Assembly (NCBI RefSeq): GCF_006345805.1
Contig: NC_043025.1
Span: forward strand, 11,656,001-11,720,000
From: Octopus sinensis
Taxonomy: Eukaryota
DNA length: 64,000 nt
Direction of reading: 5' to 3'
Position numbers and translations under genes: made by a program
Part shown: positions 1,894 through 64,000 of the stretch, piece by piece
Numbering within the stretch: the first letter of the stretch is position 1
How the letters are laid out: every line of letters starts with the position of its first letter
Notes under the pieces: generated by a model
Told to the model about the DNA's origin: nothing
What the model saw: the letters and a program-made list of their open reading frames with translations, nothing else
Databases searched by the model: none

Positions 1894-2099
1894 AAAAGTT
1901 ATGCTCACCATTCTGTATTATACTATTATACTGGCACTAGTCAAAAATTCCAGAGTTTGAAGCAGTTGTCTTATAAACAAATATGAGGTTGCCTCGATGT
2001 CCCCACAACAGGATAGTCATCCAACACAGTGGCAGTTGATAACCAAGCCTCGGGGAAGCATTTATTAGCTCACATCATCTGTAGACGGGTTGTGGACAT

Positions 2100-3640
2100 A
2101 TTTACAAAGTCAGAAAACAGCACAGCTCCCATGACTTCAGGAAACATTTTTTCACGCTGGGAGTTTCTGAAGCATGGAACAAACTGCTGGCATCAGTTGT
2201 TAGTTGTCGGAGCACTGCATCTTTCAAAACTTCCATGCTTCCTGAGATTCGCCAACACTTACACCTGACTTTCTCCCCTCCATACACACGCTGAAGCATG
2301 GAACAAACTGCTGGCATCAGTTGTTAGTTGTTGGAGCACTGCATCCTTCAAAACTTCCATGCTTCCTGAGATTCGCCAACACTACACCTGATTTTCTCCC
2401 CTCCATACACACGCTGAAGCATGGAACAAACTGCCAGCATCAGTTGTTAGTTGTTGGAGCACTGCATCCTTCAAAACTTCCATGCTTCCTGAGATTCCCC
2501 AACACTACACCTGATCTCCTCCCCTCCATACACACGCTGAAGCATGGAACAAACTGCCAGCATCAGTTGTTAGTTGTCGGTGCACTGCATCCTTCAAAAC
2601 TTCCATGCTTCCTGAGATTCCCCAACACTACACCTGATTTTCTCCCCTCTGTACGCAGGCTGAAGCATGGAACAAACTGCCGGCATCAGTTGTTAGTTGT
2701 CGGAGCACTGCATCCTCAAAACTTCCATGCTTCCTGAGAGATTCGCCAGCACTACACCTGATCTTCTCCCCTCCATACACACGCTGGAGCATGGAACAAA
2801 CTGCCGGCATCAGTTGTTGTTGTCGGAGCACTGCATCCTTCAAAACTTCCATGCTTTCTGAGATTCGCCAACACTACACCTGATTTTCTCCCCTCCATAC
2901 ACACGCTGAAGCATGGAATAAGCTGCCGGCATCAGTTGTTAGTTGTCGGAGCACTGCATCCTTCAAAACTTCCATGCTTCCTGAGATTCCCCAACACTAC
3001 ACCTGATCTTCTCCCCTCCATACACACGCTGAAGCATGGAACAAACTGCCGGCATCAGTTGTTAGTTGTCGGTGCACTGCATCCTTCAAAACTTCCATGC
3101 TTCCTGAGATTCCCCAACACTACACCTGATTTTCTCCCCTCTGTACGCAGGCTGAAGCATGGAACAAACTGCCGGCATCAGTTGTTAGTTGTCGGAGCAC
3201 TGCATCCTTCAAAACTTCCATGCTTCCTGAGAGATTCGCCAGCACTACACCTGATCTTCTCCCCTCCATACACACGCTGGAGCATGGAACAAACTGCCGG
3301 CATCAGTTGTTTGTTGTCGGAGCACTGCATCCTTCAAAACTTCCATGCTTTCTGAGATTCGCCAACACTACACCTGATTTTCTCCCCTCCATACACACGC
3401 TGAAGCATGGAATAAGCTGCCGGCATCAGTTGTTAGTTGTCGGAGCACTGCATCCTTCAAAACTTCCATGCTTCCTGAGAGATTCGCCAACACTACACCT
3501 GATTTTCTCCCCTCCATACACACACAAGCATGTATCTGACTCATGCATTGTTCGCTTTCCAGACATTTGTACATTACTGCATATTCTCTGACAAGTTGTG
3601 GTGCACCTGAGCACTGTATACAAAAATTTCATTATATATA
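2100..3640 (+). mobile_element. CR1-like LINE 3' end containing ~11 tandem copies of a ~122-bp unit
   Basis: Unit encodes WNKLPASVVSCRSTASFKTSMLPEIRQHYT*, the typical CR1/L2-group post-RT C-terminus; followed by 3'UTR and an ATT tail; unamplified copy at 47757-48195. Confidence 0.85.
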
Positions 3641-4935: not shown

Positions 4936-4994
4936 GACGACGACCTATATCATCATCATCATCATTTTGTCTGGCATGCTAGTGATTCTGCTAG

Positions 4995-5225
4995 CTCGCC
5001 GCCTTTAATAATAATCCTTTCTACCATAGGCACAAGGCCTGAAATTGCTAGGGAGAGGGCTAGTTGATTACATTGACCCCAGTGCATAACTGGTACTTAT
5101 CTCATTGATCCGAAAAGGACGAAAGTCAAAGTCGACCTCAGTGGAATTTGAACTCAGAACACAGAGATAGCCAACATGCTGCTCAGCCTTATTTCACCCA
5201 GCAGACTAATGATTCTGCCATAATA
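4995..5225 (-). mobile_element. SINE family B, degenerate
   Basis: AAAGTCGACCTCAGTGGAATTTGAACTCAGAAC core shared with the family B arrays. Confidence 0.7.
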
Positions 5226-6707: not shown

Positions 6708-9075
6708 TCATCATCATCATCGTTTAACGTCCGTTTTCTGTGCTAGCACGGGTTGGACGGTTTGACCGGGGTCTGGGAAGCCAGGAGGCTGCACCAGGCT
6801 CCAGTCTGATCTGGCAGAGTTTCTACAGCTGGATGCCCTTCCTAACGCCAACCACTCCGTGAGTGTAGTGGGTGATTTTTACGTGCCACCGGCACAGGTG
6901 CCAGGCGAGGCTGGCAGTGGCCACGATTGGCTTTTTATGTGCCACCAGCACAGAAGCCAGTCAGGGTGGTGCTGGCATCGGCCACATTCGGATGGTGCTT
7001 TTTACGTGTTACCGGCACAGAAGCCAGTCAGGGCGGCGCTGGCATCGGCCACATTCGGATGGTGCTTTTTACGTGTTACCGGCACAGAAGCCAGTCAGGG
7101 TGGCGCTGGCATCGGCCACATTCGGATGGTGCTTTTTACGTGTTACCGGCACAGAAGCCAGTCAGGGCGGCGCTGGCATCGGCCACATTCGGATGGTGCT
7201 TTTTATGTGTCACCGGCACAGAAGCCAGTCAGGGTGGCGCTGGCATCGGCCACATTCGGATGGTGCTTTTTACGTGTTACCGGCACAGAAGCCAGTCAGG
7301 GTGGCGCTGGCATCGGCCACATTCGGATGGTGCTTTTTACGTGTTACCGGCACAGAAGCCAGTCAGGGCGGCGCTGGCATCGGCCACATTCGGATGGTGC
7401 TTTTTACGTGTCACCGGCACAGAAGCCAGTCAGGGTGGCGCTGGCATCGGCCACATTCGGATGGTGCTTTTTACGTGTTACGGCACAGAAGCCAGTCAGG
7501 TGGCGCTGGCATCGGCCACATTCGGATGGTGCTTTTTACGTGTTACCGCACAGAAGCCAGTCAGGGTGGCTCTGGCATCGGCCACATTCGGATGGTGCTT
7601 TTTACGTGTTACCGGCACAGAAGCCAGTCAGGGTGGCGCTGGCATCGGCCACATTCGGATGGTGCTTTTTACGTGTTACCGGCACAGAAGCCAGTCAGGG
7701 TGGCGCTGGCATCGGCCACATTCGGATGGTGCTTTTTACGTGTTACCGGCACAGAAGCCAGTCAGGGCTGCGCTGGCATCGGCCACATTCGGATGGTGCT
7801 TTTTACGTGTCACCGGCACAGAAGCCAGTCAAGGTGGAGCTGGCATCGGCCACATTCGGATGGTGCTTTTTACGTGTCACCGGCACAGAAGCCAGTCAGG
7901 GCAGCGCTGGCATCGGCCACATTCGGATGGTGCTTTTTACGTGTTACCGGCACAGAAGCCAGTCAGGGCGGCGCTGGCATCGGCCACATTCGGATGGTGC
8001 TTTTTACGTGTCACTGGCACAAAAGCCAGTCAGGGTGGCGCTGGCATCGGGCGCTGGCATCGGCCACATTCGGATGGTGCTTTTTACGTGTTACCGGCAC
8101 AGAAGCCAGTCAGGGTGGCGCTGGCATCGGCCACATTCGGATGGTGCTTTTTACGTGTTACCGGCACAGAAGCCAGTCAGGGCGGCGCTGGCATCGGCCA
8201 CATTCGGATGGTGCTTTTTACGTGTCACTGGCACAAAAGCCAGTCAGGGTGGCGCTGGCATCGGGCGCTGGCATCGGCCACATTCGGATGGTGCTTTTTA
8301 CGTGTTACCGGCACAGAAGCCAGTCAGGGTGGCGCTGGCATCGGCCACATTCGGATGGTGCTTTTTACGTGTTACCGGCACAGAAGCCAGTCAGGGTGGC
8401 GCTGGCATCGGCCACATTCGGATGGTGCTTTTTACGTGTTACGGCACAGAAGCCAGTCAGGGCTGCGCTGGCATCGGCCACATTCGGATGGTGCTTTTTA
8501 CGTGTCACCGGCACAGAAGCCAGTCAAGGTGGAGCTGGCATCGGCCACATTCGGATGGTGCTTTTTACGTGTTACCGGCACAGAAGCCAGTCAGGTGGCG
8601 CTGGCATCGGCCACATTCGGATGGTGCTTTTTACGTGTTACCGGCACAGAAGCCAGTCAGGGTGGCGCTGGCATCGGCCACATTCGGATGGTGCTTTTTA
8701 CGTGTTACCGGCACAGAAGCCAGTCAGGGCTGCGCTGGCATCGGCCACATTCGGATGGTGCTTTTTACGTGTCACCGGCACAGAAGCCAGTCAAGGTGGA
8801 GCTGGCATCGGCCACATTCGGATGGTGCTTTTTACGTGTCACCGGCACAGAAGCCAGTCAGGGCGGCGCTGGCATCGGCCACATTCGGATGGTGCTTTTT
8901 ACGTGTTACCGGCACAGAAGCCAGTCAGGGCGGCGCTGGCATCGGCCACATTCGGATGGTGCTTTTTACGTGTCACTGGCACAGAAGCCAGTCAAGGTGG
9001 AGCTGGCATCGGCCACATTCGGATGGTGCTTTTTACGTGTCACCGGCACAGGTATCACAACTACAATTTCCATTT
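6708..9075 (-). mobile_element. RTE-like LINE 3'UTR with internal 67-bp unit expanded to ~31 copies (6947-9052)
   Basis: (CAT)n-CGTTTAACGTCCG 3' end at left; unit CGGCACAGAAGCCAGTCAGGGTGGCGCTGGCATCGGCCACATTCGGATGGTGCTTTTTACGTGTTAC. Confidence 0.9.
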
Positions 9076-9515: not shown

Positions 9516-10023
9516 TTTCGTGGTAAGTAGCTTGATAACCAACCACATGGTTCCGGGTTCAGTCCCACTGCATGGCATCTTGGGCAAGTGTCTTCTGCTA
9601 TAGCCCCGGGCCGACCAAAGCCTTGTGAGTGGATTTGGTAGACGGAAACTGAAAGAAGCCTGTCGTATATATGTATATATATATATGCAGGAGTGGCTGT
9701 GGTGAGTAGCTTGTTTACCAACCACATGGTTCCGGGTTCAGTCCCACTGCATGGCATCTTGGGCAAGTGTCTTCTGCTATAGCCCCGGGCCGACCAAAGC
9801 CTTGTGAGTGGATTGGTAGACGGAAACTGAAAGAAGCCTGTCGTATATATGTATATATATATATGCAGGAGTGGCTGTGGTGAGTAGCTTGTTTACCAAC
9901 CACATGGTTCCGGGTTCAGTCCCACTGCATGGCATCTTGGGCAAGTGTCTTCTGCTATAGCCCCGGGCCGACCAAAGCCTTGTGAGTGGATTTGGTAGAC
10001 GGAAGCTGAAAAGAAGCCCGTTG

Positions 10024-10054
<31 letters not shown>

Positions 10055-10275
10055 TTGTGTGTCTGTGTTTGTCCCCCTAGCATAGCTTGACAACCGATGC
10101 TGGTGTGTTTACGTCCCCGTCACTTAGCGGTTCGGCAAAAAGAGACCGATAGAATAAGTACTGGGCTTACAAAAAGAACAAGTCCTGGGGTCGAGTTGCT
10201 CGATTAAAGGCGGTGCTCCAGCATGGCCGCAGTCAAATGACCGAAACAAGTAAAAGAGTAAAAGAGTAAAAGAGT
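9516..10275 (+). mobile_element. SINE family A with triplicated head and a single tail
   Basis: Heads at ~9516, 9687 and 9866, each ending in a TA run; tail 10030-10275. Confidence 0.9.
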
Positions 10276-10469
10276 AAAAGAGAATATCCTTGGCTGTCAC
10301 GGCTCATGTTTCACTGCCATGTAGTATGGCTGCTCACACACAGGCATTATACAATCCGCCTTTCACTCTGAAAGAGAGACCCTTTGTTGCCATCAGAGGT
10401 AAGAGCTCCCTGAACTTTTCCCAGTCTAAAATCTTGTTTTTACAGCTGCGCTCTTGGATACGTAATTTA

Positions 10470-11186: not shown

Positions 11187-11830
11187 TCATCATCGTTTAA
11201 CGTCCGTTTTCCATGCTAGCATGGGTTGGATGGTTCAACTGGGGTCTGGGAAGCCCAAAGGCTGCACCGGGCCAGTCAGATCTGGCAATGTTTCTACAGC
11301 TGGATGCCCTTCCTAATGCCAACCACTCCAAGAGTGTAGTGGGTGCTTTTTATGTGCCACCGACACAGGTGCCAGACGAGGCTGGCGAACGGCCACACTC
11401 GGATGGTGCTTTTTTCGTGCCACCGGCATAGAGGCCAGGCGAGGCTGGCAACATCCACTATCAGATGGTGTTTGTTACGTGCCACCAGCATGGAAGTCAG
11501 TTAATGCGGTGCTGGCTACGGCCACGTTCGGATGGTTCTCTTACGTACCACCAGCACTGGTACCACAACTACAAATTCCATTGATGTTGATCGGTTTCGA
11601 TTTTGATTTGATTTGATTTCCACTTGCCTCAACAGGTCTTCACAAGTAGAGTTATGTGTCCCAAGAAGGAAGGTATGCACAGGTGGACTGACTACGTCCC
11701 AGGTAGGGCCACAGGTTATGGCCTCACTTGTACTGCCGGGTCTTCTCACGCACAGCATACTTCCAAAGGTCTCGGTCTCTGGTCATTTCCTCGGTGAGAC
11801 CTAAAGAGCAAAGGTCGTGCTTCACCACCT
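11187..11830 (-). mobile_element. RTE-like LINE 3' end, unexpanded reference copy (3'UTR plus ORF tail)
   Basis: Contains 3-4 degenerate ~62-67-bp subrepeats; the far end reads RPRKTWDEVVKHDL on the minus strand. Confidence 0.85.
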
Positions 11831-12149: not shown

Positions 12150-12385
12150 CGGTTTTAGGGTTAGGGTTTTAGGTTTAGGGTCAGGGTTAGGGCTTTAGGG
12201 TTAGGGTTACGGTTACGGTTAGGGTTTTAGGTTTAGGGTCAGGGTTAGGGCTTTAGGGTTAGGGTTACGGTTAGGGTTTTAGGTTTAGGGTTTTAGGTTT
12301 AGGGTCAGGGTTAGGGTCAGGGTTAGGGCTTTAGGGTTAGGGTTACGGTTACAGTTAGGGTTTTAGGGTTAGGGTTCTAAGGTTA
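12150..12385. repeat. Degenerate telomere-like (TTAGGG-variant) tract
   Basis: TTAGGG, TTACGG, TCAGGG and TTTTAGG variants in a repeating higher-order pattern. Confidence 0.9.
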
Positions 12386-15377: not shown

Positions 15378-16354
15378 GGATCTTTTCAGTTTGAATGGCA
15401 GTTTTTTCTAGCGGTGTCATATGAAATTATCACCCATAATTATGACCCTAGTATCGATCTATTGCATTTCAATCTATGTTAGGGTTAGGGTTAGAGGTGG
15501 GACGAAGGGTATCTTTTTTTCTTCAGAAATGTAAATAAACCCAATCTGTTTCTTAAACGAGGGACATATTCATACGGCATAGAATGTTTTCACCTCAATA
15601 GACGTCATTGATTGGTTGAAATTGCAGAAATTAAAGAAAAGAACCAACAAATATCTTAGAAACTCTAGAATTTTCTCAATAAAGCCAAGAGAAAATGATG
15701 TTTTATTAACACATTCTACCAGAATACGAAGTTTAAAAGTGTTTAGTTAACTAGAAATTATGTTAAGTTGAGGTTGTAGTTGGTGGTGGTGGTCGTGGCA
15801 GAGTTGTCCGTAGTATTGGTTGACCGTGAAGCTGTCGTCTGGTTCCTTCCAAATTCTTTCCGTGTGTCGGCGTCCATGCTCACACCTGCACCTGTGTTGC
15901 TTCCTCCCCTTCTTTCCCTCCCTCGTGAAGCAGTGGGGAAGGGGAGGGGAGGGAAATCAACGTCGTGAGCGTTGCCAAGGAGACCACCGTTCTTCTCGAC
16001 GACGACTTCATGGCTTTGAAGTCGCCATTGCTCAAAGCAGAAAATGGCTGGGAAAGCCGAAGACGAATTTACAAAATGGGGAAACACGCCACACAAAGGC
16101 AGGTTTCCCGTGCAAAGAATTTGCACGACCGAATGTATTTATTAGTTGTTGCACAATAGACGTCAGTGATTGGTTGAAATTGAACAAATTGAAGAAAAAC
16201 AACAACAAATATCTTACAAACTATAGAATTTTCTCAATAAAGCCAAGAGAAAAAGATGTTTTATTTTGACACATTCTACCAGAATACGAAGTTTAAAAGT
16301 GTTTAGTTACATGGAAATTATTTTAAAAAACTGCCGTCCAAACCGAAAAGATCC
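15378..16354. mobile_element. GGATC-TIR MITE family composite nested in the Tc2-like element
   Basis: Same TIRs as 1481-1893; the right half is duplicated, with ~360 bp of GC-richer sequence (15770-16130) between. Confidence 0.75.
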
Positions 16355-17690: not shown

Positions 17691-18721
17691 AGGCAAGACG
17701 TAGCTAGTAATTTTTAATAAAATTAAATAAAACAGATACAGACGTGGCCATGTAAAAAAAACTTGGGTGGACAAGGGGAACCATCTTCACACCCGGTTCC
17801 ATTTCCTTTTTTTTTTTTCTTTTGTGTCCCACAGAAACCTGTTTTCGGCTACGGAGATTCCGAACCCAGGATTATTTCAACGTGAAAAAAAACAAAAAAA
17901 CAAAAGGCTAAAATTTAGGGTTAGGGTTAGTGTTAGGGTTAGTGACAGGATGTTGTCTCAATTTTAGACGCAGCAAATGATTTTAGCTCAATTAGAGACA
18001 ATTGATTGGTTAAAATTCGAAAAATTAAACTACGTTAAACTTACAAATTACAATTTTCTCAAGAAAGCTAACAGAAAAGAATGTTTTATTTTGACACATT
18101 CTACCAGTATACGAAGTTTTAAAGTGTTTAGTTAACTAGAAATTGTGTTGACATGTGCCGTTCAAAAGGAAAAGATCTCAAATCTGTAAAAAAAAAATAG
18201 GCATTTCTAAATTTAAATTAATCCCCAAACCCACCTCCAATTTTTTCATTTTTCACTTTTTTTTCAGAAATTTGTTTTGGCGAATCACGTTGAAAAATAC
18301 GGAGATAATGATTCTGAAAAAAAAATTTTTTTTTTAAATTTCAATTTTTCAAAAAAAGAAAACGTAAAAAAAATTACTCCTCCCAACCCTTCGCGAATGT
18401 ACAGTATATACATGATACCTTTAAATCCTTTAGGTCATTGCAAATGAGATGGGGTTTTCCAACCTGCGCCTTAAATAGGCCTTCAAGCAGTGCTTCCACC
18501 TGCTAGAAATAACAGCCAAATCTTTGACAAACTCTACATAACATTGTAGGCATTCCTACACAAATGTGCCCCCTCGATTTTGTTTCCTCATAACTTCATA
18601 CAGTATAGATTCCAATTATATCGGAATAATTTTGGAAAAAAAATTTGCAAACAGTAGCGTGAGGAGTTTCGAAAAATTCCCATGTCAGCTTTGTTTCTTT
18701 GCAAAATTTTCTACATATACA

Positions 18722-20134: not shown

Positions 20135-20724
20135 AATCTTTTCTATTTTAGGCACAAGACCTGAACTTTTGGGGAAGGGGACTCGTCGATTACATCAACC
20201 CCAGAATTTCACTGGTACTTAATTTTAATTTATTGACCCCTGAAAGGACAAAAGGCAAAGTTGACCTCGGCGGAACTGGAACTCAGAACGTAGCGGCAGA
20301 CGAAATACCTATTTCTTTACTACCCACAAGGGGCTAAACACAGAGAGGACAAACAAGGACAGACATAGGTAGTAAGTCGATTACATCGACCCTAGTGCGT
20401 AACTGGTACTTAATTTATCGACCCCGAGAGGATGAAAGGCAAAGTCGACCTCGGCGGATTTGAACTCAGAACGTAGCGGCAGACGAAATACCTATTTCTT
20501 TACTGCCCACAAGGGGCTAAACACAGAGGGGACAAACAAGGACAGACAAAGGGATTAAGTCGATTATATCGACCCCAGTGCGTAACTGGTACTTAATTTA
20601 TTGACCCCAAAAGGATGAAAGGCAAAGTCGACCTCGGTGGAATTTGAACTCAGAACGTAACGGCAGACGAAATACCGCTAAGCATTTCGCCCGGCGTGCT
20701 AACATTTCTGCCAGCTCGCCGCCT

Positions 20725-22940: not shown

Positions 22941-23368
22941 ATTATTGCTTTTGTCGTTATTGTTTCGGTATTTTATATGAGCTGTAACTCAAAGGCCTCT
23001 AGTAACGAGTTTAATGTTTTACTACGCCTCTTAATTATTAGTCATAATTATACACAAAAGAGACTGAATACTGAAATGCATTCCGTAGTATATGGGCCGT
23101 ACCCATCAAGGTTATCTTTTGTAGTTCAAGGTGATTGGGGTTACCAGGGAGTTGCTTAATATACTTCTCAGCAGCTCCCTTTTTTATCATTCCCAACGCA
23201 CCAATTCCTTCTGGTGTTATCGTAGTACGAAGCTCCCACATTTTTGTGATTTCAATTTGCGGTCTTTGTAGTGAGAACCCTTTTTGTATTCCAAAATCAG
23301 AAATATTGAATTTCTGAATATCTCATAGAGATATGTGCAGGGGTGGAGCGATAGAGTGGTTGTATACT

Positions 23369-23952
23369 TATTTCTTTACTGCCCACAAGGGACTAAACAT
23401 AGAGGAGACAATCAAGGACAGACAAAGGGATTAAGTCGATTATATCGACCCCAGTGCGTAACTGGTACTTATTTAATCGACCCCGAAAGGATGAAAGGCA
23501 AAGTTGACCTCGGCGGAATTTGAACTCAGAACGTAAAGACAGACAAAATACCTCTTTCTTTACTACCCACAAGGGGCTAAACACAGAAGGGACAAACAAG
23601 GACAGACAAACGGATTAAGTCGACCATATCGACCCCAGTGCGTAACTGGACCTTAATTTATCGACCCCGAAAGGATGAAAGGCAAAGTCGACCTCGGCGG
23701 AATTTGAACTCAGAACGTAAAGACAGACGAAATACCTATTTCTTTATTGCCCACAAGGAGCTAAACACAGAGGGGACAAACGGATTAAGTCGACCATATC
23801 GACCCCAGTGCGTAACTGGACCTTAATTTATCGACCCCAAAAGGATGAAAGGCAAAGTCGACCTCGGCGGAATTTGAACTCAGAACGTAGCGGCGGGCGA
23901 AATACCACAAAGCATTTCGCCTGGCGTGCTAACCATTCTGCCAGCTCGCCGC
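23369..23952 (-). mobile_element. SINE family B trimer with 15-bp TSD
   Basis: GAGTGGTTGTATACT at 23354-23368 and 23953-23967; internal junctions at ~23550 and ~23735; full head at the right end. Confidence 0.92.
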
Positions 23953-24302
23953 GAGTGGTTGTATACTGTCAACTTAACATGACAGTCCCGTAAGGGAATT
24001 ACACCACCACTGTTTAGCCCTAGGAAGCATCGACGCTTCCTGTCAGCCTCGACACATTTCCTGTGTCCTTATATTTGCAAAGGGGAGACAAACACCCCCA
24101 ACAGCTAGGCCTGCATAAGACCCTGAAACATGCATGTATCTAGATGCAGGCCTTGCTGTTGGGGTGTTTGTCTCCCCTTCGTAAATATATAAGGACACAG
24201 GAAATGTGTCAAGGCTGACAGGAAGCGTCGATGCTTCCTAGGGCTAAACAACGGTGGTGTAATCCCCTACTGTCACATTAAGTTGACAGTATACAACCAC
24301 TC
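23953..24302. mobile_element. Fold-back element / long-IR MITE (~160-bp arms, short loop)
   Basis: GAGTGGTTGTATACTGTCAACTTAA...GGCCTGCAT mirrored by ATGCAGGCC...TTAAGTTGACAGTATACAACCACTC. Confidence 0.9.
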
Positions 24303-28809: not shown

Positions 28810-30165
28810 CATCATCATCATCATCATCATCATTTAACGTCCGCTTTCCATGCTAGCATGGGTTGGACGGTTAAACTGGGGTCTGGGAAGCCAGAAGGCT
28901 GCATCAGGCCCAGTCTGATCTGGCAGCGTTTCTACAGCTGGATGCCCTTCCTAACGCCAACCACTCCGAGAGTGTCGTGGGTGATTTTATGTGCCACCGA
29001 CACAGGTGCCAGACGAGGCTGGCAAACGGCCACGCTCGGATGGTGTTTTTTATGTGCCACCGACACAGTGCCAGACGAGGCCTGGCAAACGGCCACGTCG
29101 GATGGTGTTTTTTATGTGCCACCGAACCAGGTGCCAGACGAGGCTGGCAACGGCCACGCTCGGATGGTGTTTTTTATGTGCCACCGACACAGGTGCCAGA
29201 CGAGGCTGGCAAACGGCCCTCGCTCGGATGGTGTTTTTTATGTGCCCCGACACAGGTGCCAGACGAGGCTGGCAACGGCCTCGCTCGGATGGTTTTTTAT
29301 GTGCCACCGACACAGGTGCCAGACGAGGCTGGCAACGGCCCCCCGCTCGGATGGTGTTTTTTATGTGCCACCGACACAGGTGCCAGACGAGGCTGGCAAA
29401 CGGCCCCGCTCGGATGGTGTTTTTTATGTGCCACCGACACAGGTGCCAGACGAGGCTGGCAAACGGCCCCGCTCGGATGGTGTTTTTTATGTGCCACCGA
29501 CACAGGTGCCAGACGAGGCTGGCAAACGGCCTCGCTCGGATGGTGTTTTTAGTGCCACCGACACAGGTGCCAGACGAGGCTGGCAAACGGCCCCGCTCGG
29601 ATGGTTGTTTTTTATGTGCCACCGACACAGGTGCCAGACGAGGCTGGCAAACGGCCTCGCTCGGATGGATGGTGTTTTTTATGTGCCACCGACACAGGTG
29701 CCAGACGAGGCTGGCAAACGGCCCCGCTCGGATGGTGTTTTTTATGTGCCACCGACACAGGTGCCAGACGAGGCTGGCAAACGGCCCCGCTCGGATGGTG
29801 TTTTTTATGTGCCACCGACACAGGTGCCAGACGAGGCTGGCAAACGGCCTCGCTCGGATGGTGTTTTTTATGTGCCACCGACACAGGTGCCAGACGAGGC
29901 TGGCAGACGGTCACGCTCGGATGGTGTTTTTATGTGCCACCGACACAGGTGCCAGATGAGGCTGGCAAACGGCCACGATCGGATGGTGCTTGTTACGGTC
30001 CCACAGCACGGAGGCCAGTCGACTCGGTACTGGCTACGGCCACGTTCGGATGGTTTTCTTATGTGCCACGTGTCACCGGCACTGGTACCACAAAGATACA
30101 AATTCCATTGATGTTCATCTATTTTGATTTGTTTTGATTTTGACTTGTCTCAACAGGTCTTCATG
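28810..30165 (-). mobile_element. RTE-like LINE 3'UTR with a ~62-bp unit expanded ~16x (28990-29985)
   Basis: (CAT)n-TTTAACGTCCG end; unit GTGCCACCGACACAGGTGCCAGACGAGGCTGGCAAACGGCCCCGCTCGGATGGTGTTTTTTAT. Confidence 0.9.
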
Positions 30166-37719: not shown

Positions 37720-40605
37720 AATGAAATTATTGTATACAGTGCTCAGGTGCACCACAACTTGTCAGAGTATATACAGTAATGTACAAATGTCTGGAAAGCG
37801 AACAATGCATGAGTCAGATACATGCTTGTGTGTGTATGGAGGGGAGAAGATCAGGTGTAATAATAATAATAATAATAAACATTGTGTACAGTGCTCAGGT
37901 GCACTACAACTCATCTATAGTGCATATATAATCAGGTGTAGTTTCGACGGATTTCGGAAAGCATGAGGGCCTTAAAGGATGCAGTGTCATGGCAGTCAAC
38001 AACTGACGCAGGCAGTTTTTTCCATGCTTCAGTAACTCTGAGCATGAAGAAATGTTTCCGAAAGTCATGGGAGCTGTGTTGTTTTCTGACTTTGTAGGCA
38101 TGTCCACGTGTGTTAGACACATGGAGATCAAAAAAATGTTCAGTGTTGTTATTGGTGAGGTGGTTGATAACTTTGTGGGTGTTTACCAAGTCCGTCGCCA
38201 GACGCCGGAGCTTCAGTGAATCCATGCCCAGGGAAACAAGGCGCTCAGAATATGGTAGGTGTCTGATGGAGGGTATGCATTTGGTTGCACGTCTCTGAAC
38301 AGAGTGGCGAATCTCAGAAAGCATGAAAGTTTTGAAGGATGCAGTGCTCCGACAACTAACAACTGATGCCGGCAGTTTGTTCCATGCTTCAGCGTGTGTA
38401 TGGAGGGGAGAAGATCAGGTGTAGTGTTGGCGAATCTCAGGAAGCATGGAAGTTTTAAAGGATGCAGTGCTCCGACTAAAACAACTGATGCCGGCAGTTT
38501 GTTCCATGCTTCAGCGTGTGTATGGAGGGGAGGAGAAGATCAGGTGTAGTGTTGGCGAATCTCAGGAAGCATGGAAGTTTTGAAGGATGCAGTGCTCCGA
38601 CAACTAACAACTGATGCCGGCAGTTTGTTCCATGCTTCAGCGTGTGTATGGAGGGGAGAAGATCAGGTGTAGTGTTGGCGAATCTCAGGAAGCATGGAAG
38701 TTTTAAAGGATGCAGTGCTCCGACAACTAACAACTGATGCCGGCAGTTTGTTCCATGCTTCAGCGTGTGTATGGAGGGGAGAAGATCAGGTGTAGTGTTG
38801 GCGAATCTCAGGAAGCATGGAAGTTTTAAAGGATGCAGTGCTCCGACAACTAACAACTGATGCCGGCAGTTTGTTCCATGCTTCAGCGTGTGTATGGAGG
38901 GGAGAAGATCAGGTGTAGTGTTGGCGAATTTCTCAGGAAGCATGGAAGTTTGAAGGATGCAGTGCTCCGACAACTAACAACTGATGCCGGCAGTTTTTTT
39001 CCATGCTTCAGCGTGTGTATGGAGGGGAGAAGATCAGGTGTAGTGTTGGCGAATCTCAGGAAGCATGGAAGTTTTAAAGGATGCAGTGCTCCGACAACTA
39101 ACAACTGATGCCGGCAGTTTTTCCATGCTTCAGCGTGTGTATGGAGGGGAGAAGATCAGGTGTAGTGTTGGCGAATCTCAGGAAGCATGGAAGTTTTAAA
39201 GGATGCAGTGCTCCGACAACTAACAACTGATGCCGGCAGTTTGTTCCATGCTTCAGCGTGTGTATGGAGGGGAGAAGATCAGGTGTAGTGTTGGCGAATT
39301 TCTCAGGAAGCATGGAAGTTTTGAAGGATGCAGTGCTCCGATAACTAACAACTGATGCCGGCAGTTTGTTCCATGCTTCAGCTTGTGTATGGAGTGGAGA
39401 AGATCAGGTGTAGTGTCGGCGAATCTCAGAAAGCATGGAAGATTTGAAGGATGCAGTGCTCCGACAACTAACAACTGATGCCGGCAGTTTGTTCCATGCT
39501 TCAGCATGTGTATGGAGGGGAGAAAATCAGGTGTAGTGTTGGCGAATCTCTCAGAAAGCATGGAAGTTTTGAAGGATGCAGTGCTCCGACAACTAACAAC
39601 CGATGCCGGCAGTTTGTTCCATGCTTCAGCGTGTGTATGGAGGGGAGAAGATCAGGTGTAGTGTCGGCGAATCTCAGAAAGCATGGAAGTTTTGAAGGAT
39701 GCAGTGCTCCGACAGCCAACAACTGATGCCGGCAGTTTGTTCCATGCTTCAGCGTGTGTATGGAGGGGAGGAGAAAATCAGGTGTAGTGTTAGCGAATCT
39801 CTCAAGAAGCATGGAAGTTTTGAAGGATGCAGTGCTCCGACAACTAACAACTGATGCCGGCAGTTTGTTCCATGCTTCAGTGTGTGTATGGAGGGGAGAA
39901 GATCAGGTGTAGTGTTGGCGAATCTCAGAAAGCATGGAAGTTTTGAAGGATGCAGTGCTCCGACAACCAACAACTGATGCCAGCAGTTTGTTCCATGCTT
40001 CAGTGTGTGTATGGAGGGGAGAAGATCAGGTGTAGTGTTGGCGAATCTCTCAGGAAGCATGGAAGTTTTGAAGGATGCAGTGCTCCGACAACTAACAACT
40101 GAGGCCGGCAGTTTGTTCCATTCTTCAGCAACTCTCAGCGTGAAAAAATGTTTCCAAAAGTCATGGGAGCTGTGCTGTTTTCTGACTTTGTAAACATGTC
40201 CACAGGTGTTAGACAGGTGGAGTTTGAAAAGGTGCTCAGAGTTATTGTTTGTAAGATGGTTAATAATTTTATGGGTGTCTGTCAAGTCAGCTGCCAGACA
40301 TTGGAGTTTCAATGTGTCCATGCCCAGGGAAGAAAGGCGTTCAGAATATGGCAAATGCCTGATGGAGGGTATTCTCTTGGTTGCACGTCACTGAACAGTT
40401 TCCAGGGAGAAAATCAGGTGTGGTGTTGGCGAATCTCAGGAAGCATGGAAGTTTTGAAGGATGCAGTGCTCCGACAACTAACAACTGATGCCGGCAGTTT
40501 GTTCCATGCTTCAGCAACTCTTAGCGTGAAAAAATGTTTCCTGAAGTCATGGAAGGAGCTGTGCTGTTTTCTGACTTTGTAAATATGTCCACGGGTGTTA
40601 GACGG
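37720..40605 (-). mobile_element. Concatenated CR1-like LINE 3' fragments with ~14-15 tandem ~122-bp units (38330-40120)
   Basis: PYSERL..LGMD.LKLRRLATDL..THKVIN...TRGHAYKVRK...RKHFFTLRV.E.WNKLP is the typical CR1 C-terminus; same unit as 2173-3520. Confidence 0.9.
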
Positions 40606-50933: not shown

Positions 50934-51033
50934 NNNNNNNNNNNNNNNNNNNNNNNNNNNNNNNNNNNNNNNNNNNNNNNNNNNNNNNNNNNNNNNNNNN
51001 NNNNNNNNNNNNNNNNNNNNNNNNNNNNNNNNN
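50934..51033. other. Assembly gap (exactly 100 N)
   Basis: Round-number N run, typical of an unknown-size placeholder. Confidence 0.98.
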
Positions 51034-53245: not shown

Positions 53246-53282
<37 letters not shown>

Positions 53283-54519: not shown

Positions 54520-55534
54520 CTGCAAACAGAGAAAAGGACATTGCAAGTTTTAAGCACACATGCATTTATATGAAGGTCATATAACCGAAACTTCAAAATC
54601 ATGGTCAAGTATTTTCTATGTAAATACAATATTGTATGTGAAGTGTGTATATAAATATATATTGTTTTATCTATACCTCAAAGGGTCAGCCTTATCACAT
54701 TCTTATTTCATTATTGCCCACAAGGGGCTAAACACAGAGGGGACAAACAAGGACAGACAAAGGGATTAAGTTGATTACATCGACCCCAGTGTGTAAACTG
54801 GTACTTAATTTATTTTCATTTCCTGGTCACTGGAATAATGTTAACCTCTCAAACCCTATGAAGAAACACTCTATAAACGTGTTTTTCTTCATTTTCATTT
54901 CAAATGTAGACCAATTTAGACGAAAAGTATACGAGACATGAGACACGTAATCCTACAAATCCCGTAAAAATTTCAAGAAAATTGGACAAGGGGTTTTGAT
55001 TTTATTGAGGAATGATTAAGCACAGGCATCCACCCATGACCAACATGTGGATTTGCATGTCGAGGACTGCAATGTTCAATGGGTCTTTCCAATTATTTTA
55101 AGAAGGTAGAAGGTGATTGGAGAGGGTTAGGTGCTATTTCAAGCAGGCTGAGTGGACTGCAAAGAGGTTCCATCAGGAAACTCGTTGGAAGTTGTTGATG
55201 TTGTTGTTATAGCTATCACAGTTTCACAGCACCCAAATTATTCCCCGTGTCAAATTAGATGAATTGGTCATCGTTGGAATGTCTGTCTATCAGGACTGAC
55301 CATGGGGCAAAGTAAAAACAAGAAAAAAAAATGAAAAAACAAAATAGGAAGGTTTAGAAACCAGAAAAGGGTAGGTTCAGACGCAGGAATTTAAGGGTTG
55401 TTGAAGCAAATACTTACTAATAGGGGCTTCCGATGTTCATAGTCCGTAGAAACCAGCAGGTGGCGTTTGCGTAGCTAAGGTCCTGGAAAAGTGTCAAGAT
55501 ATGGAAACAGGTAAATAGAACAATAGATAAATAG

Positions 55535-59035: not shown

Positions 59036-59280
59036 GACGGTTAAATAACCGTAAATAATTTGAAATCTTTTCCTTGTTTTTCCGGCTGGATTAGATCCCC
59101 GTTCAACTAAACAAAGACATAGATAAACAGTAATAGTGACTACCACTAAATTTATTTCCGATTTAGACCCAGGGGGGGAGGGTGTGAGTAGATTCGATCG
59201 ACCCCAGGACTTGGACTGGACCTCGGGTGGATGAAAGACAAAATTTATACTTCAGCAAGATTTGAAATCAGAACATAATA

Positions 59281-60019
59281 TATTTCTTTATTGCCCACAA
59301 AGGGGCTAAACATAGAGGGGACAAACAAGGCCAGACAAAAGGATTAAGTCGATTAGATTGACCCCAGTGCTTAACTGGTACTTTATTTATCAACCCCGAA
59401 AGGATGAAAGGCAAAGTCGACCTCGGCAGAATTTGAACTCAGAACATAGCGGCAGACGAAATACCTATTTCTATTTCTTTACTACCCACAAGGGGTTAAA
59501 CAGAGAGGGGACAAACAAGGACAGACAAAGGGATTTAGTCGATTAGATCGACCCCAGTGCGAAACTGGTACTTAATTTATCGACCCCCGAAAGGATGAAA
59601 GGCAAAGTCGACCTCGGCGGAATTTGAACTCAGAACATAGCGGCAGACGAAATACCTATTTCTATTTCTTTACTACCCACAAGGGGCTAAACATAGAGGG
59701 GACAAACAAGGCCAGACAAAGGGATTTAGTCGATTAGATCGACCCCAGTGCGAAACTGGTACTTAATTTATCGACCCCCGAAAGGATGAAAGGCAAAGTC
59801 GATCTCGGCGGAATTTGAACTCAGAACATAGCGGCAGACGAAATACCTATTTCTATTTCTTTACTACCCACAAGGGGCTAAACATAGAGGGGACAAACAA
59901 AGACAGACAAAGGGATTTAGTCGATTAGATCGAACCCAGTGCGAAACTGGTACTTAATTTATCGACCCCCCGAAAGGATGAAAGGCAAAGTCGACCTCGG
60001 CGGAATTTGAACTCAGAAC
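59281..60019 (-). mobile_element. SINE family B tetramer, 5'-truncated, with TSD, inside an older SINE B
   Basis: CAGAACATAATA(TA) at 59269-59282 and 60020-60033; junctions at 59465, 59656 and 59847. Confidence 0.9.
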
Positions 60020-60515
60020 CAGAACATAATATAAAGAGCTTGAATAAGAACCGCAAAGTACTTTTTTTTTCCTGCTGCTCTAACGATTCTGCCAAACACT
60101 TCGAGCATCGTTCGTTAAACACAAAAGTTACAAGAATATGAATCGACCCAAGTATTATGTCGAAGGTTTATTTTGCATTATCAATAATAAACCACATACT
60201 CCTGCATATACAACAGAGTAGAACTTTGAAAACATGTGTGTGTGTTAGTTTCCTTTGTCCTGGGTATTAAAATAGCCGATCTCTGTTCTAGGCTGGGTAT
60301 CATATGGATGAAGACGGGGGTAAGAGCAGCTGTTAAAAATACGGTAGAATTTGAAGCGAAGAAAGAAAAGTTTCGGCTATATGAGGAATGTAATTTTTAT
60401 TTCATGAAGGGTTTTTCGTTAATTAGACCCCGAAACAATTTGTAGAATGTATACTGGCTCTGTACCAGCTTGGATTACGAAGTGAATTAAAGTTCGTCTA
60501 AACTTAGAATTCAAA

Positions 60516-60863
60516 TTCTGAGTTCAAATTCCGCCGAGGTCGACTTTGCCTTTCATCCTTTCGGGGGTCGATAAATAAAGTACCAGTTACGCACTGGGGT
60601 CGATCTAATCGACTAAATCCCTTTGTCTGTCCTTGTTTGTCCCCTCTATGTTTAGCCCCTTGTGGGTAGTAAAGAAATAGGTATTTCGTCTGTTTTTACG
60701 TTCTGAGTTCAAATTCTGCCGAGGTCGACTTTGCCTTTCATCCTTTCGGGGTCGATTAAATAAAGTACCAGTTACGCACTGGGGTCGATGTAATCGACTT
60801 CATCCCTTTGTCTGTCCTTGTTTGTCCCCTCTGTGTTTAGCCCCTGTGGGTAGTAAAGAAATA
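60516..60863 (+). mobile_element. SINE family B dimer with probable 10-bp TSD
   Basis: Junction GTAGTAAAGAAATA|GGTATTTCG at 60679/60680; ACTTAGAATT at 60502-60511 and 60867-60876. Confidence 0.85.
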
Positions 60864-61876
60864 TATACTTAGAATTTTCCTTTCCTTATATTTCATATAT
60901 ATATATATATATATATTATAAATATATATATATAATATATCATATATATATATATATATATATACATATACATAAGTAGTAATATCTGCGCCCCAAAGTA
61001 TAAATAAAGCTATATGCTAGTAACCATAGGAGGGTAGACTCGTTGTGGTGTCGATCGAACTGTTAGAAATAGCAACAAATATCCTTAAAATCACATCAAC
61101 GATATACTTTTACAATAAACTTACGAGATAAGGAGGAAGGTTTCCACTTGGACCAACTAGATAATGAAGTCCATCTCAAAATAAGAAAGGCACGGTTGTA
61201 ACACTTTCTGATTGAAGGTCTGCTTCGGTTCGGACCAGACCCGAGGTTAAACGACTGGTTTGTCGAGGCTTTGTGTGGTGTGTGTGTGTGTGAGATGAGA
61301 GAGAGAGAGAGAGCAAGCTATGAGTGGAGACTCTTATATTTTGCCGGTTGTAGATACGAACGAAAAACCGATTCCATCAAATAACCAGTAAAAAAAAAGA
61401 AAAGCAGGGACCAAATCTCGATCAAATTATACCAGGGTGTTTTAAAGAAAATGAAGGATACATAAGGGATTATGTAGGGCAATCGTTCATTTAAAGGGGA
61501 TCTTCTTAACCCCCGCCCACTTTAAATATATTTTTATTATTATGGTTTTTTTCTTAAAACCAGTCTTTGGATATTATTTCGAACATGATTTTCAAAACAT
61601 AAATAAGGTCTAATCTCTTACTATTTTTATTTTTAAGACATAAAAAAAAATGATATTGCTGGGGTGAATTTAAAATACAAGCTAAAACAAGTTTCTAATA
61701 TAGTCGCAGATGCGCGATATATGAGGGAACTTGGACAGAGATGGCCATATCTGGAATACTTTTATACTTTTGATAACAGGCTTGCTCGATCAGATCTCAT
61801 CAGCGGTTAAATAACTAGTTAAGCGAGTGTGTGTGTGTGTGTGTGTATGAGTGTATATATACATATACATACTTAG

Positions 61877-62431: not shown

Positions 62432-64000
62432 TATTTCTATTTCTTTATTACCCACAAGGGGCTAAACATAGAGGGGGGGACAAACAAGGACAGAAAAACG
62501 GATTAAGACGATTATATCAACCCCCAGTGCGTAACTGGTACTTATTTAATCGACCCCCGAAAGGATGAAAGGCAAAGTCGACCTCGGCGGAATTTGAACT
62601 CACAACGTAGCGGCAGACGAAATACCTATTTCTTTACTACCCACAAGGGGCTAAACACAGAGGGGACAAACATGGACAGACATAGGTATTAAGTCGATTA
62701 TATCGACCCCAGTGCTTAGCTGGTACTTAATTTATCGACCCCGAAAGGATGAAAGGCAAAGTCGACCTCGGCGGAATTTGAACTCACAACGTAGCGGCAG
62801 ACCAAATACCTATTTCTTTACTACCCACAAGGGGCTAAACACAGAGGGGACAAACAAGGACAGAAAAACGGATTAAGACGATTATATCGACCCAGTACTT
62901 ATTTAATCGACCCCGAAAGGATGAAAGGCAAAGTCGACCTCAGCGGAATTTGAACTCAGAACGTAACGGCAGACCAAATACCTATTTCTTTACTACCCAC
63001 AAGGGGCTAAACACAGAGGGGACAAACAAAGGACAGAAAAACGGATTAAGACGATTATATCGACCCCAGTGCGTAACTGGTACTTATTTAATCGACCCCC
63101 GAAAGATGAAAGGCAAAGTTGACCTCGGCGGAATTTGAACTCAGAAGTAGCGGCAGACGAAATACCTATTTCTTTACTACCCACAAGGGGCTAAACACAG
63201 AGGGGACAAAACAAAGACAGAAAAACGGATTAAGACGATTATATCGACCCCAGTGCTAACTAGTATTATTTAATCGACCCCCGAAAGGATGAAAGGCAAA
63301 GTCGACCTCGGCGGAATTGAACTCAGAACGTAGCGACTGACCAAATACCTATTCTTATACCCACAAGGGGTAAACACAGAGGGGACAAACACAAGGACAG
63401 AAAAACGGATTAAGACGATTATATCGACCCCAGTGCTAACTGGTACTTATTTATCGACCCCCGAAAGGATGAAAGGCAAAGTCGACCTCGGCGGAATTTG
63501 AACTCAGAACGTAGCGACTGACCAAATACCTATTTCTTTACTACCACAAGGGGCTAAACTCAGAGGGGACAAACAAGGACAGAAAAACGGATTAAGACGA
63601 TTATATCGACTCCAGTGCTAACTGGTACTTATTTAATCGACCCCGAAAGGATGAAAGGCAAAGTCGACCTCGGCGGAATTTGAACTCAGAACGTAACGGC
63701 AGACCAAAACCTATTCTTTACTACCCACAAGGGGCTAAACACAGAGGGGACAAACAAGGACAGAAAAACGGATTAAGACGATTATCGACCCCAGTGCTAA
63801 ATGGTACTTATTTAATCGACCCCGAAGGATGAAAGGCAAAGTCGACCTCGGCGGAATTTGAACTCACAACGTAGCGGCAGACGAAATACCTATTCTTTAC
63901 TACCCACAAGGGGGCTAAACACAGAGGGGACAAACAAGGACAGAACAAAAACGGATTAAGACGATTATATCGACCCAGTACGGATTAAGACGATTATATC
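62432..64000 (-). repeat. SINE family B array, at least 9 units of ~180 bp, running off the window
   Basis: Same AAATACC|TATTTCTTTACT junction throughout. Confidence 0.95.

What the first reader, a model, noticed from the sequence alone, without database searches (positions are those of the whole stretch)
23354..23967. SINE multimers with one fixed internal junction, inserted as units (TSD-flanked)
Seen: at five loci (20135, 23369, 59281, 60516, 62432) SINE B forms 2 to at least 9 head-to-tail units. They are joined essentially at ...GTAGTAAAGAAATA|GGTATTTCG, which is the 3' end fused to a point inside the tRNA-like head and removes the A box. Here a 15-bp TSD encloses the whole trimer, and only the 5'-most unit has a full head. 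TSDs also enclose the tetramer and dimer. The tail GAAAUA is exactly complementary to UAUUUC immediately after the junction GG. Inference: tail-to-head pairing places an RNA 3' end beside the point where RT leaves the template, giving reiterative, pseudo-rolling-circle retrotransposition that seeds satellites. I do not know of this being described.
Basis: partly seen in the sequence, partly recalled or inferred. Interest (0 to 1): 0.85.

Follow-up and report, generated by a model that had tools for sequence, protein, structure and literature searches.

The report
Octopus SINE multimers, one fixed join
A short octopus retrotransposon (SINE) sits at five places in this window as head-to-tail arrays that all share one internal join; some arrays were pasted in as whole blocks, but their growth to many copies looks like ordinary DNA-level repeat expansion, not a new rolling-circle copying mechanism.

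Summary
SINE B forms 2 to at least 9 head-to-tail units at five loci. All 16 internal joins fuse the exact 3' end (GAAATA) to GGTATTTCG inside the head. Complex direct repeats of 15, 14 and 10 bp enclose the trimer, tetramer and dimer.

The join lies at the first base of the 3' arm of a conserved 11-bp head hairpin. The tail copies that hairpin's 5' arm, and this explains the tail/hexamer complementarity.

The proposed mechanism, reiterative copying of one RNA, is not supported:
- Units inside one repeat-bounded array differ by 6-12%.
- 3'-terminal units carry more CpG decay.
- B2 is a mosaic of its neighbours.
- Eight of nine units of the longest array share a T5 run, a Pol III stop, so they multiplied as DNA.
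- Internal units at all five loci share a marker (GGGTAGTAAAG) that five monomers lack.

Best reading (about 0.5): the join was made rarely, by a reverse-transcription event. It is inherited in a multimer lineage that retrotransposes as blocks and then expands by unequal exchange.

The same architecture is published for a blood clam, and SINE-derived satellites for squamates. A genome-wide census could not be run.

The parts
23354..23368 (-). TSD copy next to the 3' tail of the locus B trimer (AGTATACAACCACTC in SINE orientation)
   Evidence: identical 15/15 to 23953-23967
23369..23552 (-). Unit B3, the 3'-terminal unit. It starts at GGTATTTTG and ends GGGCAGTAAAGAAATA
   Evidence: It has 8 private substitutions, 3 of them at CpG sites
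23553..23736 (-). Unit B2, the internal unit. It is a mosaic: its 5' end matches B3 (GTCTGTCTTT) and its middle matches B1 (GGTCCA, ATGGTC). Its tail region is the internal type, GGGTAGTAAAG
23737..23906 (-). Unit B1, counted from GGTATTTCG onward: the body and tail of the head-bearing first unit, with a 14-bp deletion
23907..23952 (-). 5' part of the head. It holds the A-box-like TGGCAGAATGG and the 5' arm and loop of the 11-bp hairpin. It is present only on the first unit and lacks the AAG that precedes 8 other heads
23953..23967 (-). TSD copy next to the 5' end of the locus B trimer
20138..20722 (-). Locus A: full head + A1, then A2, then A3. The first 31 nt of A3 are identical to the SINE B consensus. 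The rest of A3 belongs to the (ATT)n-tailed B' subfamily. (ATT)n lies on both sides, so no TSD can be called
59269..60033 (-). Locus C: 14-bp TSD (59269-59282 and 60020-60033) around C1-C4 (59281-60018). C1 is 5'-truncated at TTCTGAG. The C1-C3 joins have GAAATA doubled, giving a period of 191. The array is inserted inside an older SINE copy
60502..60876 (+). Locus D: 10-bp TSD (60502-61511 corrected: 60502-60511 and 60867-60876), 4-nt filler, then D1 (5'-truncated at TTCTGAG) and D2 (60516-60863)
62432..64000 (-). Locus E: a partial unit plus 8 full units, running off the window end. Eight of nine units share CCGTTTTTCTG (a T5 run). E7 lacks it. The terminal tail is GAAATAGAAATA
54704..54813 (-). 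The only non-arrayed SINE B copy in the window: a 5'-truncated 3' fragment with the monomer-type tail GGGCAATAATGAAATA

Best explanation
SINE B has a multimer-forming lineage, which amounts to a SINE-derived minisatellite that is still mobile.

Structure. A head-bearing first unit is followed by head-less units. Each head-less unit begins at the first base of the 3' arm of the head's conserved 11-bp hairpin and ends at the element's exact 3' terminus.

Origin of the join (inferred). The join was created rarely, perhaps once, by a reverse-transcription-level event. That event was either a template jump from the hairpin apex to an RNA 3' end, or an insertion into the hairpin loop. The join has been inherited since.

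Spread. Multi-unit RNAs are copied into new sites as blocks by a LINE enzyme through target-primed reverse transcription. This is shown by TSDs, 5' truncation and filler DNA. The RNAs are probably Pol III transcripts driven by the head promoter, because the consensus unit has no T4 stop (inferred).

Growth. After insertion, arrays grow and shrink by DNA-level unequal exchange or slippage. This is shown for E and is likely for B and C. That process, not repeated copying of one RNA, sets the unit number of 2 to at least 9.
For: - All 16 joins are the same, and each uses the exact 3' terminus.
- The join sits at the apex of a hairpin. That hairpin is paired in 91.6% of cells across 9 heads, against 40-65% when the partner columns are slid, and two pairs show compensatory changes.
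- TSDs of 15, 14 and 10 bp enclose B, C and D. C and D are 5'-truncated. The empty site of C reads as one continuous older SINE.
- Internal units at all 5 loci carry GGGTAGTAAAG. All 5 monomers (L001, three in L002, and 54704-54813) lack GGGTAGTAAAG (4 have C at the first marker site and 4 have A at the second), and most first or last units carry GGGCAA/GGGCAG. Counting loci against monomers, 5/5 vs 0/5 gives p about 0.004 by hand calculation.
- The consensus unit and the young units C1-3, D1, A2, B2 and E7 have no T4 run. Eight of nine E units share a T5 run, so the longest array multiplied as DNA.
- B2 combines B3's 5' variants with B1's middle variants. C2 and C3 share C4's TATG variant but are otherwise C1-like. 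These are the hybrids that unequal crossover predicts.
- 3'-terminal units are more decayed. CpG substitutions: C4 has 5 against 0-1 in C1-3; D2 has 3 against 0 in D1; B3 has 3 against 1 in B1 and B2.
- A3's join belongs to a 31-nt young B segment grafted onto an older B' body. The join was therefore already on the template when the two were joined near the B box.
Against: - Only five arrays and five monomers were available. Four of the monomers come from other octopod sequence (O. vulgaris and a metagenome contig), so the marker could partly reflect species or subfamily differences.
- Terminal units of different arrays are not similar to each other (7.7-10.9%). No single master is visible.
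- B2's last 15 nt fit neither B1 nor B3, so a simple one-crossover history does not explain B.
- No multi-unit RNA has been seen.
- Loci A and B as they now stand carry a T4 run in their first units, so they could not serve as sources today.
- The identical 5' truncation point of C and D is unexplained.
Confidence: 0.5

Rival explanations
1. At each insertion the LINE reverse transcriptase leaves the template at GG and resumes on an RNA 3' end. That end is held there by GAAAUA/UAUUUC pairing. The enzyme copies the same RNA, or sister RNAs, again and again (pseudo-rolling circle), so multimers arise anew at each event.
For: - The join uses the exact RNA 3' terminus and lies at a structurally defined point, the apex of the hairpin.
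- The tail is complementary to the 6 nt after GG.
- Tail length varies as (GAAATA)1-2 at joins and ends, as RT slippage would produce.
- Blocks are TSD-flanked.
- C1-C3 are nearly identical to each other.
- Five of the six SINE B insertions in the window are multimers.
Against: - Units in TSD-bounded arrays differ by 6-12%. The 39 TSD positions show no mismatch. If all unit differences had arisen after insertion, the chance of that is about 0.06 by hand calculation.
- C4 carries about 9 differences from C1-3, which differ by only 2-4 among themselves.
- Internal units share a marker that monomers lack.
- E units carry a T5 run.
- None of the four resolved 5' ends starts at GG.
- In the full-length RNA the 11-bp intramolecular stem outcompetes a 6-bp tail pairing.
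- The B2|B3 variants GAAAGA/TATTTT are not compensatory.
- Four of four SINE B copies in 49.5 kb of other octopod DNA are monomers.
Confidence: 0.18
2. Nested insertion. New SINE B copies integrate into the hairpin loop of a resident copy, at a site resembling the preferred TAT-containing target. Their 5' ends are then resolved by annealing to the resident head. This yields a seamless tandem that keeps the resident's TSDs.
For: - The sequence after the join (GGTATTT) resembles the sequences that follow free tails: AGTATA, TATTAT, TATACT, AATATA, GTTATT.
- 3'-terminal units look older than upstream units.
- Locus C shows that SINE B blocks do land inside older SINE copies.
Against: - C and D are 5'-truncated downstream of the hairpin yet carry joins and are enclosed by their own TSDs. 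The joins therefore arrived on the inserted cDNA.
- A3's first 31 nt are young, not resident-like.
- No unresolved intermediate was seen, that is, a partial resident head upstream of a second full head.
Confidence: 0.12
3. Independent local tandem duplication of a single inserted monomer at each locus, by DNA slippage or unequal crossover only, with no mobile multimers.
For: - The genome is rich in tandem arrays: 28.8% of the window and 16-22% of two O. vulgaris loci lie in repeats of period 50 or more.
- E and probably C1-3 did expand as DNA.
Against: - The same join to the nucleotide at five loci.
- That join coincides with the element's exact 3' terminus.
- 5'-truncated arrays are bounded by TSDs.
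- D1 at one locus is 98% identical to C2 and C3 at another.
- Microhomology at GAAAT would retain the loop GCTTAGC, which the join lacks.
Confidence: 0.05
4. Circular-RNA route, retrozyme-like or by tRNA-ligase joining. A 184-nt unit RNA is cut in the hairpin loop, circularised, and copied by rolling-circle reverse transcription.
For: Unit size (about 184 nt) and tandem genomic arrangement resemble animal non-LTR retrozymes (PMC7229834). The RNA ends could form a 6-bp panhandle.
Against: - Rfam finds no hammerhead or other ribozyme at the gathering threshold across the window, nor at E up to 10 in the locus.
- Arrays A and B start with a full head, which a circle could not provide.
- Units within arrays are heterogeneous.
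Confidence: 0.03

Closest known systems
TSD1-(SINE)n-TSD1 tandem SINE arrays in the blood clam Scapharca broughtonii (Martelossi et al. 2024, PMC11481361)
   Same: One pair of TSDs encloses the whole array. Only the first unit has the complete tRNA-related head. Internal units are all truncated at the same head position. The host is also a mollusc.
   Different: In the clam, the first and internal units also lack part of the 3' tail, so the repeat is an internal segment. Here every unit runs to the exact 3' terminus. Here 5'-truncated arrays with their own TSDs show that blocks are mobile. The clam paper offers only unequal recombination as a cause.
SINE-derived satellites (sSat) of squamate reptiles (Vassetzky et al. 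2023, PMC10702118)
   Same: Tandem repeats made from part of a SINE, with a longer terminal unit reaching the SINE terminus. There are many loci with the same unit structure. Copy number varies between orthologous loci, and longer arrays are more homogeneous.
   Different: TSDs and mobilisation as blocks were not analysed there. The units there are various internal portions. The arrays reach 1000 units and prefer subtelomeres. Here the arrays are short and the unit boundary is the RNA 3' end.
Complex (dimeric or trimeric) SINEs such as Alu, Twin and B1-dID, which amplify from multimeric templates (SINEBase, PMC3531059; PMC8466645)
   Same: Two or more SINE-derived monomers are transcribed from the left monomer's promoter and retrotransposed as one unit with one TSD pair. 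The right monomer lacks a full promoter.
   Different: Those families have a fixed number of monomers and stable left/right diagnostic differences. Here unit number ranges from 2 to at least 9, and no consistent first-versus-last difference was found beyond the tail-proximal marker.
Head-to-tail multimers of full-length SINEs (Dip, B2, B1 in rodents; PMC8466645)
   Same: Up to eight units in tandem, making up a large share of copies.
   Different: Those units are complete, joined through A-rich tails, and compatible with successive insertion into tails. Here internal units lack the 5' 46 nt of the head and no tail or TSD material lies between units.
Animal non-LTR retrozymes (Cervera and de la Pena 2020, PMC7229834)
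   Same: Tandem repeats of 170-400 bp, from dimers to large multimers, sometimes with TSDs.
   Different: They are defined by a type I hammerhead ribozyme in each unit, and none is found here. They have no Pol III head.
End-to-end template jumping and chimeric retrocopies made by non-LTR reverse transcriptases (R2 RT and U6-L1 chimeras are from my own knowledge; PMC2104539 and PMC4476161 were seen only as titles and abstract openings in the search list and were not read)
   Same: A cDNA continues from one RNA onto the 3' end of another, giving precise 3'-terminus joins inside one TSD pair.
   Different: The known cases join different RNAs at variable points, usually at the donor's 5' end. They do not found a repeat family with one fixed join.

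Membership tests
SINE (Pol III-transcribed, LINE-mobilised short retroposon) | Head derived from tRNA, 7SL or 5S RNA (at least 60% identity to a tRNA, in the SINEBase definition) | tested here: not met
   ARAGORN finds no tRNA in the window. Rfam gives no tRNA hit at the gathering threshold, nor at E up to 10 in 23300-24020. Identity to individual tRNA species was not computed.
SINE (Pol III-transcribed, LINE-mobilised short retroposon) | Internal Pol III promoter (A and B boxes) | tested here: inconclusive
   By eye, TGGCAGAATGG matches 10 of 11 positions of TRGCNNAGTGG, and GAGTTCAAATTCC is B-box-like with one extra base. No transcription data are available.
SINE (Pol III-transcribed, LINE-mobilised short retroposon) | Dispersed copies flanked by variable-length TSDs, with 5' truncation | tested here: met
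   TSDs of 15, 14 and 10 bp. Truncated copies are C, D and 54704-54813. Monomers occur in O. vulgaris L002 and in L001.
SINE (Pol III-transcribed, LINE-mobilised short retroposon) | 3' region shared with a partner LINE | not tested
   No LINE ending in ...GTAAAGAAATA was found in the window. The only LINE 3' end present, which is CR1/jockey-like, ends differently.
SINE-derived satellite / tandem SINE array | Tandem units derived from part of a SINE, with a longer terminal unit reaching a SINE terminus | tested here: met
   Units correspond to head position 47 through to the 3' end. The first units of A and B carry the full head.
SINE-derived satellite / tandem SINE array | Same unit structure at several loci, with variable copy number | tested here: met
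   Five loci with 2, 3, 3, 4 and at least 9 units.
SINE-derived satellite / tandem SINE array | Expansion and homogenisation at the DNA level | tested here: met
   The T5 variant is shared by 8 of 9 E units. E2 and E6 differ by 2.4% and E1 and E5 by 3.4%. B2 and C2/C3 are hybrids.
Complex (dimeric) SINE family | Retrotransposed as one unit within one TSD pair | tested here: met
   B, C and D.
Complex (dimeric) SINE family | Fixed number of monomers with stable monomer-specific differences | tested here: not met
   Unit number ranges from 2 to at least 9. No consistent first-versus-last unit difference was found.
Non-LTR retrozyme | Hammerhead ribozyme in each repeat unit | tested here: not met
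   No Rfam hit on either strand.
Non-LTR retrozyme | Expressed as circular RNA | not testable with these tools
   No RNA data are available.

The most novel reading that the evidence does not exclude
SINE RNAs are cut at the 3' side of the apical loop of the head hairpin, much like a tRNA-half cleavage. This leaves 184-nt RNAs that start at GG and whose two ends can pair. The partner LINE's reverse transcriptase runs off that 5' end and jumps onto another tail, or a ligase joins the ends. Multimeric cDNAs are then built during a single integration event. That would be a general, RNA-processing-driven route from dispersed SINE to satellite.
Probability: 0.15. Interest if true: 0.8.

Novelty: new variant of a known kind. 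Interest (0 to 1): 0.45.

Why it matters
How dispersed retrotransposons turn into tandem satellites is an open question. Published cases (squamate sSats, clam SINE arrays) are explained only by generic unequal recombination.

This locus set offers a clean intermediate. The repeat unit is bounded by an RNA 3' end and by the apex of a conserved hairpin. Blocks are still mobile, shown by TSDs and 5' truncation. DNA-level expansion is visible in the same window.

If the join proves recurrent, it would expose a new reverse-transcriptase behaviour. If it is inherited, as I judge more likely, it still shows that a seed of two units can be spread by retrotransposition. That would give the genome many dispersed starting points for satellite growth. 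This is relevant to the unusually repeat-rich octopus genome, in which SINEs make up about 11.6% (PMC13282606).

Tried and rejected
1. Retrozyme or hammerhead. Rfam gathering scan of the window and a permissive scan of the locus gave nothing relevant.

2. Microhomology join at GAAAT, shared by the tail and the 5' arm. nhmmer does align the join to head position 35 onward. However, such a join would keep the loop GCTTAGC or GCTTTGT, which is absent. The nascent cDNA end (...ATACC-3') cannot pair with GAAAUA-3'. I rejected this as a sufficient cause.

3. A general mechanism shared with 'SINE A'. Its arrays (9520-10045 and 52356-53796) repeat the 5' part with its own head, joined through (TA)n. 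That is a different architecture.

4. Inverted DNA duplication linking C and D. Homology stops exactly at the SINE boundaries and the flanks differ. Rejected, but the shared truncation point stays unexplained.

5. D's 5' flank as an old SINE head. There is some resemblance by eye, but no nhmmer hit. Dropped.

6. Genome-wide census. This could not be completed.
- Exact-pattern scans of viral and metagenome contigs found nothing.
- A protein search with the antisense SINE ORF found one 543-bp contig.
- The LINE fragment search gave two O. vulgaris regions and one 8-kb contig.
- A zinc-finger query, meant to harvest more octopus loci, returned only other animals.
- Look-ups of two window ORFs were not on record.

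7. TSD null using positions at the array's own spacing. It was inflated by tandem repeats and was replaced by random flank pairs.

8. A literature search for the SINE core sequence found no paper.

Full report
**Context.** The window is octopus DNA. A LINE ORF fragment at 39749-40354 is 90% identical to an Octopus vulgaris protein. The window is very repeat-rich: 28.8% lies in tandem repeats of period 50 or more, against 16-22% in two O. vulgaris regions. It also holds degenerate (TTAGGG)n. The element in the finding, 'SINE B', is on the minus strand at four of its five loci.

**Observation: arrays and join.** TRF, BLAST and manual dissection agree on five arrays:
- A: 20138-20722, 3 units
- B: 23369-23952, 3 units
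- C: 59281-60018, 4 units
- D: 60516-60863, 2 units
- E: 62432-64000, a partial unit plus 8 units, running off the window

All 16 internal joins are ...GTAAAGAAATA|GGTATTTCG. The three C joins have GAAATA doubled (period 191), and some E joins have single-base indels. The motif GTAAAGAAATA, with up to one mismatch, occurs 18 times against 2 expected, and 17 of those are in these arrays.

**Observation: heads and flanks.** Full heads are present only on A1 and B1. The join maps to head position 47, downstream of the A-box-like TGGCAGAATGG. The target-site duplications (TSDs) are real and of complex sequence: B 15/15, C 14/14, D 10/10 with a 4-nt filler. Random flank pairs reach such lengths in at most 0.3-0.6% of trials, almost all through microsatellites. 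Joining C's flanks gives an uninterrupted older SINE copy, so C is a true insertion. The first units of C and D are 5'-truncated. Locus A lies in (ATT)n, so no TSD can be judged there. ARAGORN and Rfam do not recognise the head as a tRNA.

**Anatomy of the join.** The head folds into an 11-bp hairpin, GGCGAAAUGCU-loop-GGUAUUUCGCC. In nine head copies from the window, O. vulgaris and a metagenome contig, 91.6% of the pair cells form a standard base pair. When the partner columns are slid by one to three positions, only 40-65% do. Two pairs show compensatory changes. Internal units start at the first base of the 3' arm. The tail, AAAGAAAUA, resembles the 5' arm, GGCGAAAUG. The unit's right edge is the element's exact 3' terminus, as seen next to TSDs in this window and on monomers elsewhere. 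A DNA-level duplication would hit that base only by luck. The join was therefore most likely first made at the RNA or cDNA level (inference).

**Tests of reiterative copying of one RNA.**
- *Unit divergence.* Units within a TSD-bounded array are not alike. B1, B2 and B3 differ by 6.5-11.8%, which is as much as units of different arrays (mean 9.0%). C4 differs from C1-3 by 6-8%, while C1-3 differ by 2.1-2.4%. The 39 TSD positions have no mismatch. If all unit differences had arisen after insertion, the chance of that is about 0.06 (hand calculation).
- *Older terminal units.* 3'-terminal units carry more CpG decay: C4 has 5 substitutions against 0-1 in C1-3, D2 has 3 against 0 in D1, and B3 has 3 against 1 in B1 and B2.
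- *Hybrid units.* B2 has B3's 5' variants and B1's middle variants. C2 and C3 share C4's TATG but are otherwise C1-like. Unequal crossover predicts such hybrids. B2's last 15 nt, however, fit neither neighbour.
- *T5 run in E.* Eight of nine E units share CCGTTTTTCTG. A T5 run is a Pol III terminator, so these units multiplied in place as DNA. The consensus unit and the young units have no T4 run, so read-through of several units is possible.
- *A3 is a chimera.* Its first 31 nt are identical to the SINE B consensus. The rest belongs to an (ATT)n-tailed subfamily and is roughly 15-20% diverged by my count from the alignment in the shared core (28% over the whole unit). Its join therefore came with a young B segment and is not evidence for a new join.
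- *Shared marker.* Internal units at all five loci have GGGTAGTAAAG. Five monomers and most first or last units have GGGCAATAAAG or GGGCAGTAAAG. Counting loci against monomers, 5/5 vs 0/5 gives p about 0.004 (hand calculation). Small numbers and mixed sources limit this test.
- *Monomers elsewhere.* In 49.5 kb of other octopod DNA, all four SINE B copies are full-headed monomers. The window was flagged because it has arrays, so this contrast is biased.

**Best explanation (about 0.5).** A multimer-forming lineage exists in which the join is inherited. Blocks of units are retrotransposed. This step is shown by the TSDs, the 5' truncation, the filler DNA and the restored empty site. The blocks are probably copied from Pol III read-through RNAs started at the head (inferred). 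Arrays then change length by DNA-level exchange, which is shown for E and is likely for B and C. The window data suggest that dimers may be the usual inserted form, with B and C expanded later (inferred).

**Rival explanations.**
The join uses an RNA 3' end, lies at a defined structural point, and shows tail-length slippage. It is weakened by the seven tests above.
- Nested insertion into the hairpin loop, with homology-assisted repair (about 0.12), would explain the older 3' units and the target-like GGTATTT. It cannot give the TSD-bounded, 5'-truncated arrays C and D.
- Independent local duplication (about 0.05) cannot explain one identical join at five loci.
- A retrozyme-like circle (about 0.03) lacks a ribozyme and cannot supply full heads.

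**Comparison with published cases.**
- The same architecture, TSD1-(SINE)n-TSD1 with a full head only on the first unit, is reported in the blood clam. There the units also lack part of the tail (PMC11481361).
- SINE-derived satellites with a longer terminal unit are widespread in squamates and are attributed to unequal recombination (PMC10702118).
- Full-length head-to-tail SINE multimers and dimeric SINEs are well known (PMC8466645, PMC3531059).
- My literature searches found no description of this in cephalopods.
- I therefore rate it a new variant of a known kind. The new elements are a unit bounded by the exact RNA 3' end and a hairpin apex, and direct evidence that blocks are mobile.

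**Limits.** Five arrays, five monomers, and no RNA data. Attempts to reach more octopus sequence mostly failed. Three points remain open:
- why C and D share the same 5' truncation point
- why the join sits exactly at the hairpin apex
- why unit E7 lacks the E-specific variant

Noticed in passing
window 38305-40354 (minus) and 2029-3523 (plus); L004 10001-11497: The C-terminal end of a CR1/jockey-like LINE ORF2 runs into an array of 11-15 units of 123 bp. The units are made from the ORF's last codons plus the 3' region, joined at ...CCATACACACG|CTGAAGCATGG. The same array with the same join follows the homologous ORF in Octopus vulgaris. This is a second retroelement whose 3' part is multimerised with a fixed join at several loci.
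   Followed up: partly
window 9520-10282 and 52356-53796: A second SINE ('SINE A', core GGTTCCGGGTTCAGTCCCACTG) also forms arrays of 3 and about 8 units. Here each unit is the 5' 178 bp with its own head, joined through (TA)n. The full element continues to an (AGTAAAAG)n tail at 10249-10282. The architecture differs from SINE B.
   Followed up: partly
window 59967-60018 versus 60516-60567: Arrays C and D lie 497 bp apart in opposite orientation. They begin at the identical SINE position (TTCTGAG), and their first 52 nt are 100% identical. Their TSDs, flanks and last units differ. The cause was not resolved: a common source RNA, an RT stop, or gene conversion.
   Followed up: partly
window 12155-12376, 15479-15496, 17915-17944: A degenerate interstitial telomere-type (TTAGGG)n array, plus two short runs, within a region dense in satellites.
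   Followed up: no
window 54017-54183: A short insert with 58-nt inverted arms (91% complementary), MITE-like, interrupts a SINE B-type head that starts at 53928.
   Followed up: no
window 4990-5225 (minus); unit A3 20138-20309: A sister subfamily (B') shares SINE B's head and core but has a different 3' end (...CCTTGTGCCTA...TAGAAARG) and an (ATT)n tail. Another truncated head sits directly in its tail at 4962-5002. Full heads are preceded by AAG in 8 of 9 copies.
   Followed up: partly
window 6930-9051, 11342-11491, 28985-30069: Related satellites of 63-67 bp (GGTGCTTTTTACGTG...CGGATGGT) lie at three places and carry long open reading frames (up to 757 codons) in several frames. No function was examined.
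   Followed up: no
window 50934-51033: A run of 100 N, which is an assembly gap.
   Followed up: no
L001 (ENA ERZ23499442 scaffold_285125) and L005 (ENA ERZ26693861): Contigs labelled as metagenome assemblies carry octopod repeats: a SINE A fragment plus a SINE B monomer in L001, and a LINE fragment in L005. These samples therefore contain host or prey cephalopod DNA.
   Followed up: no
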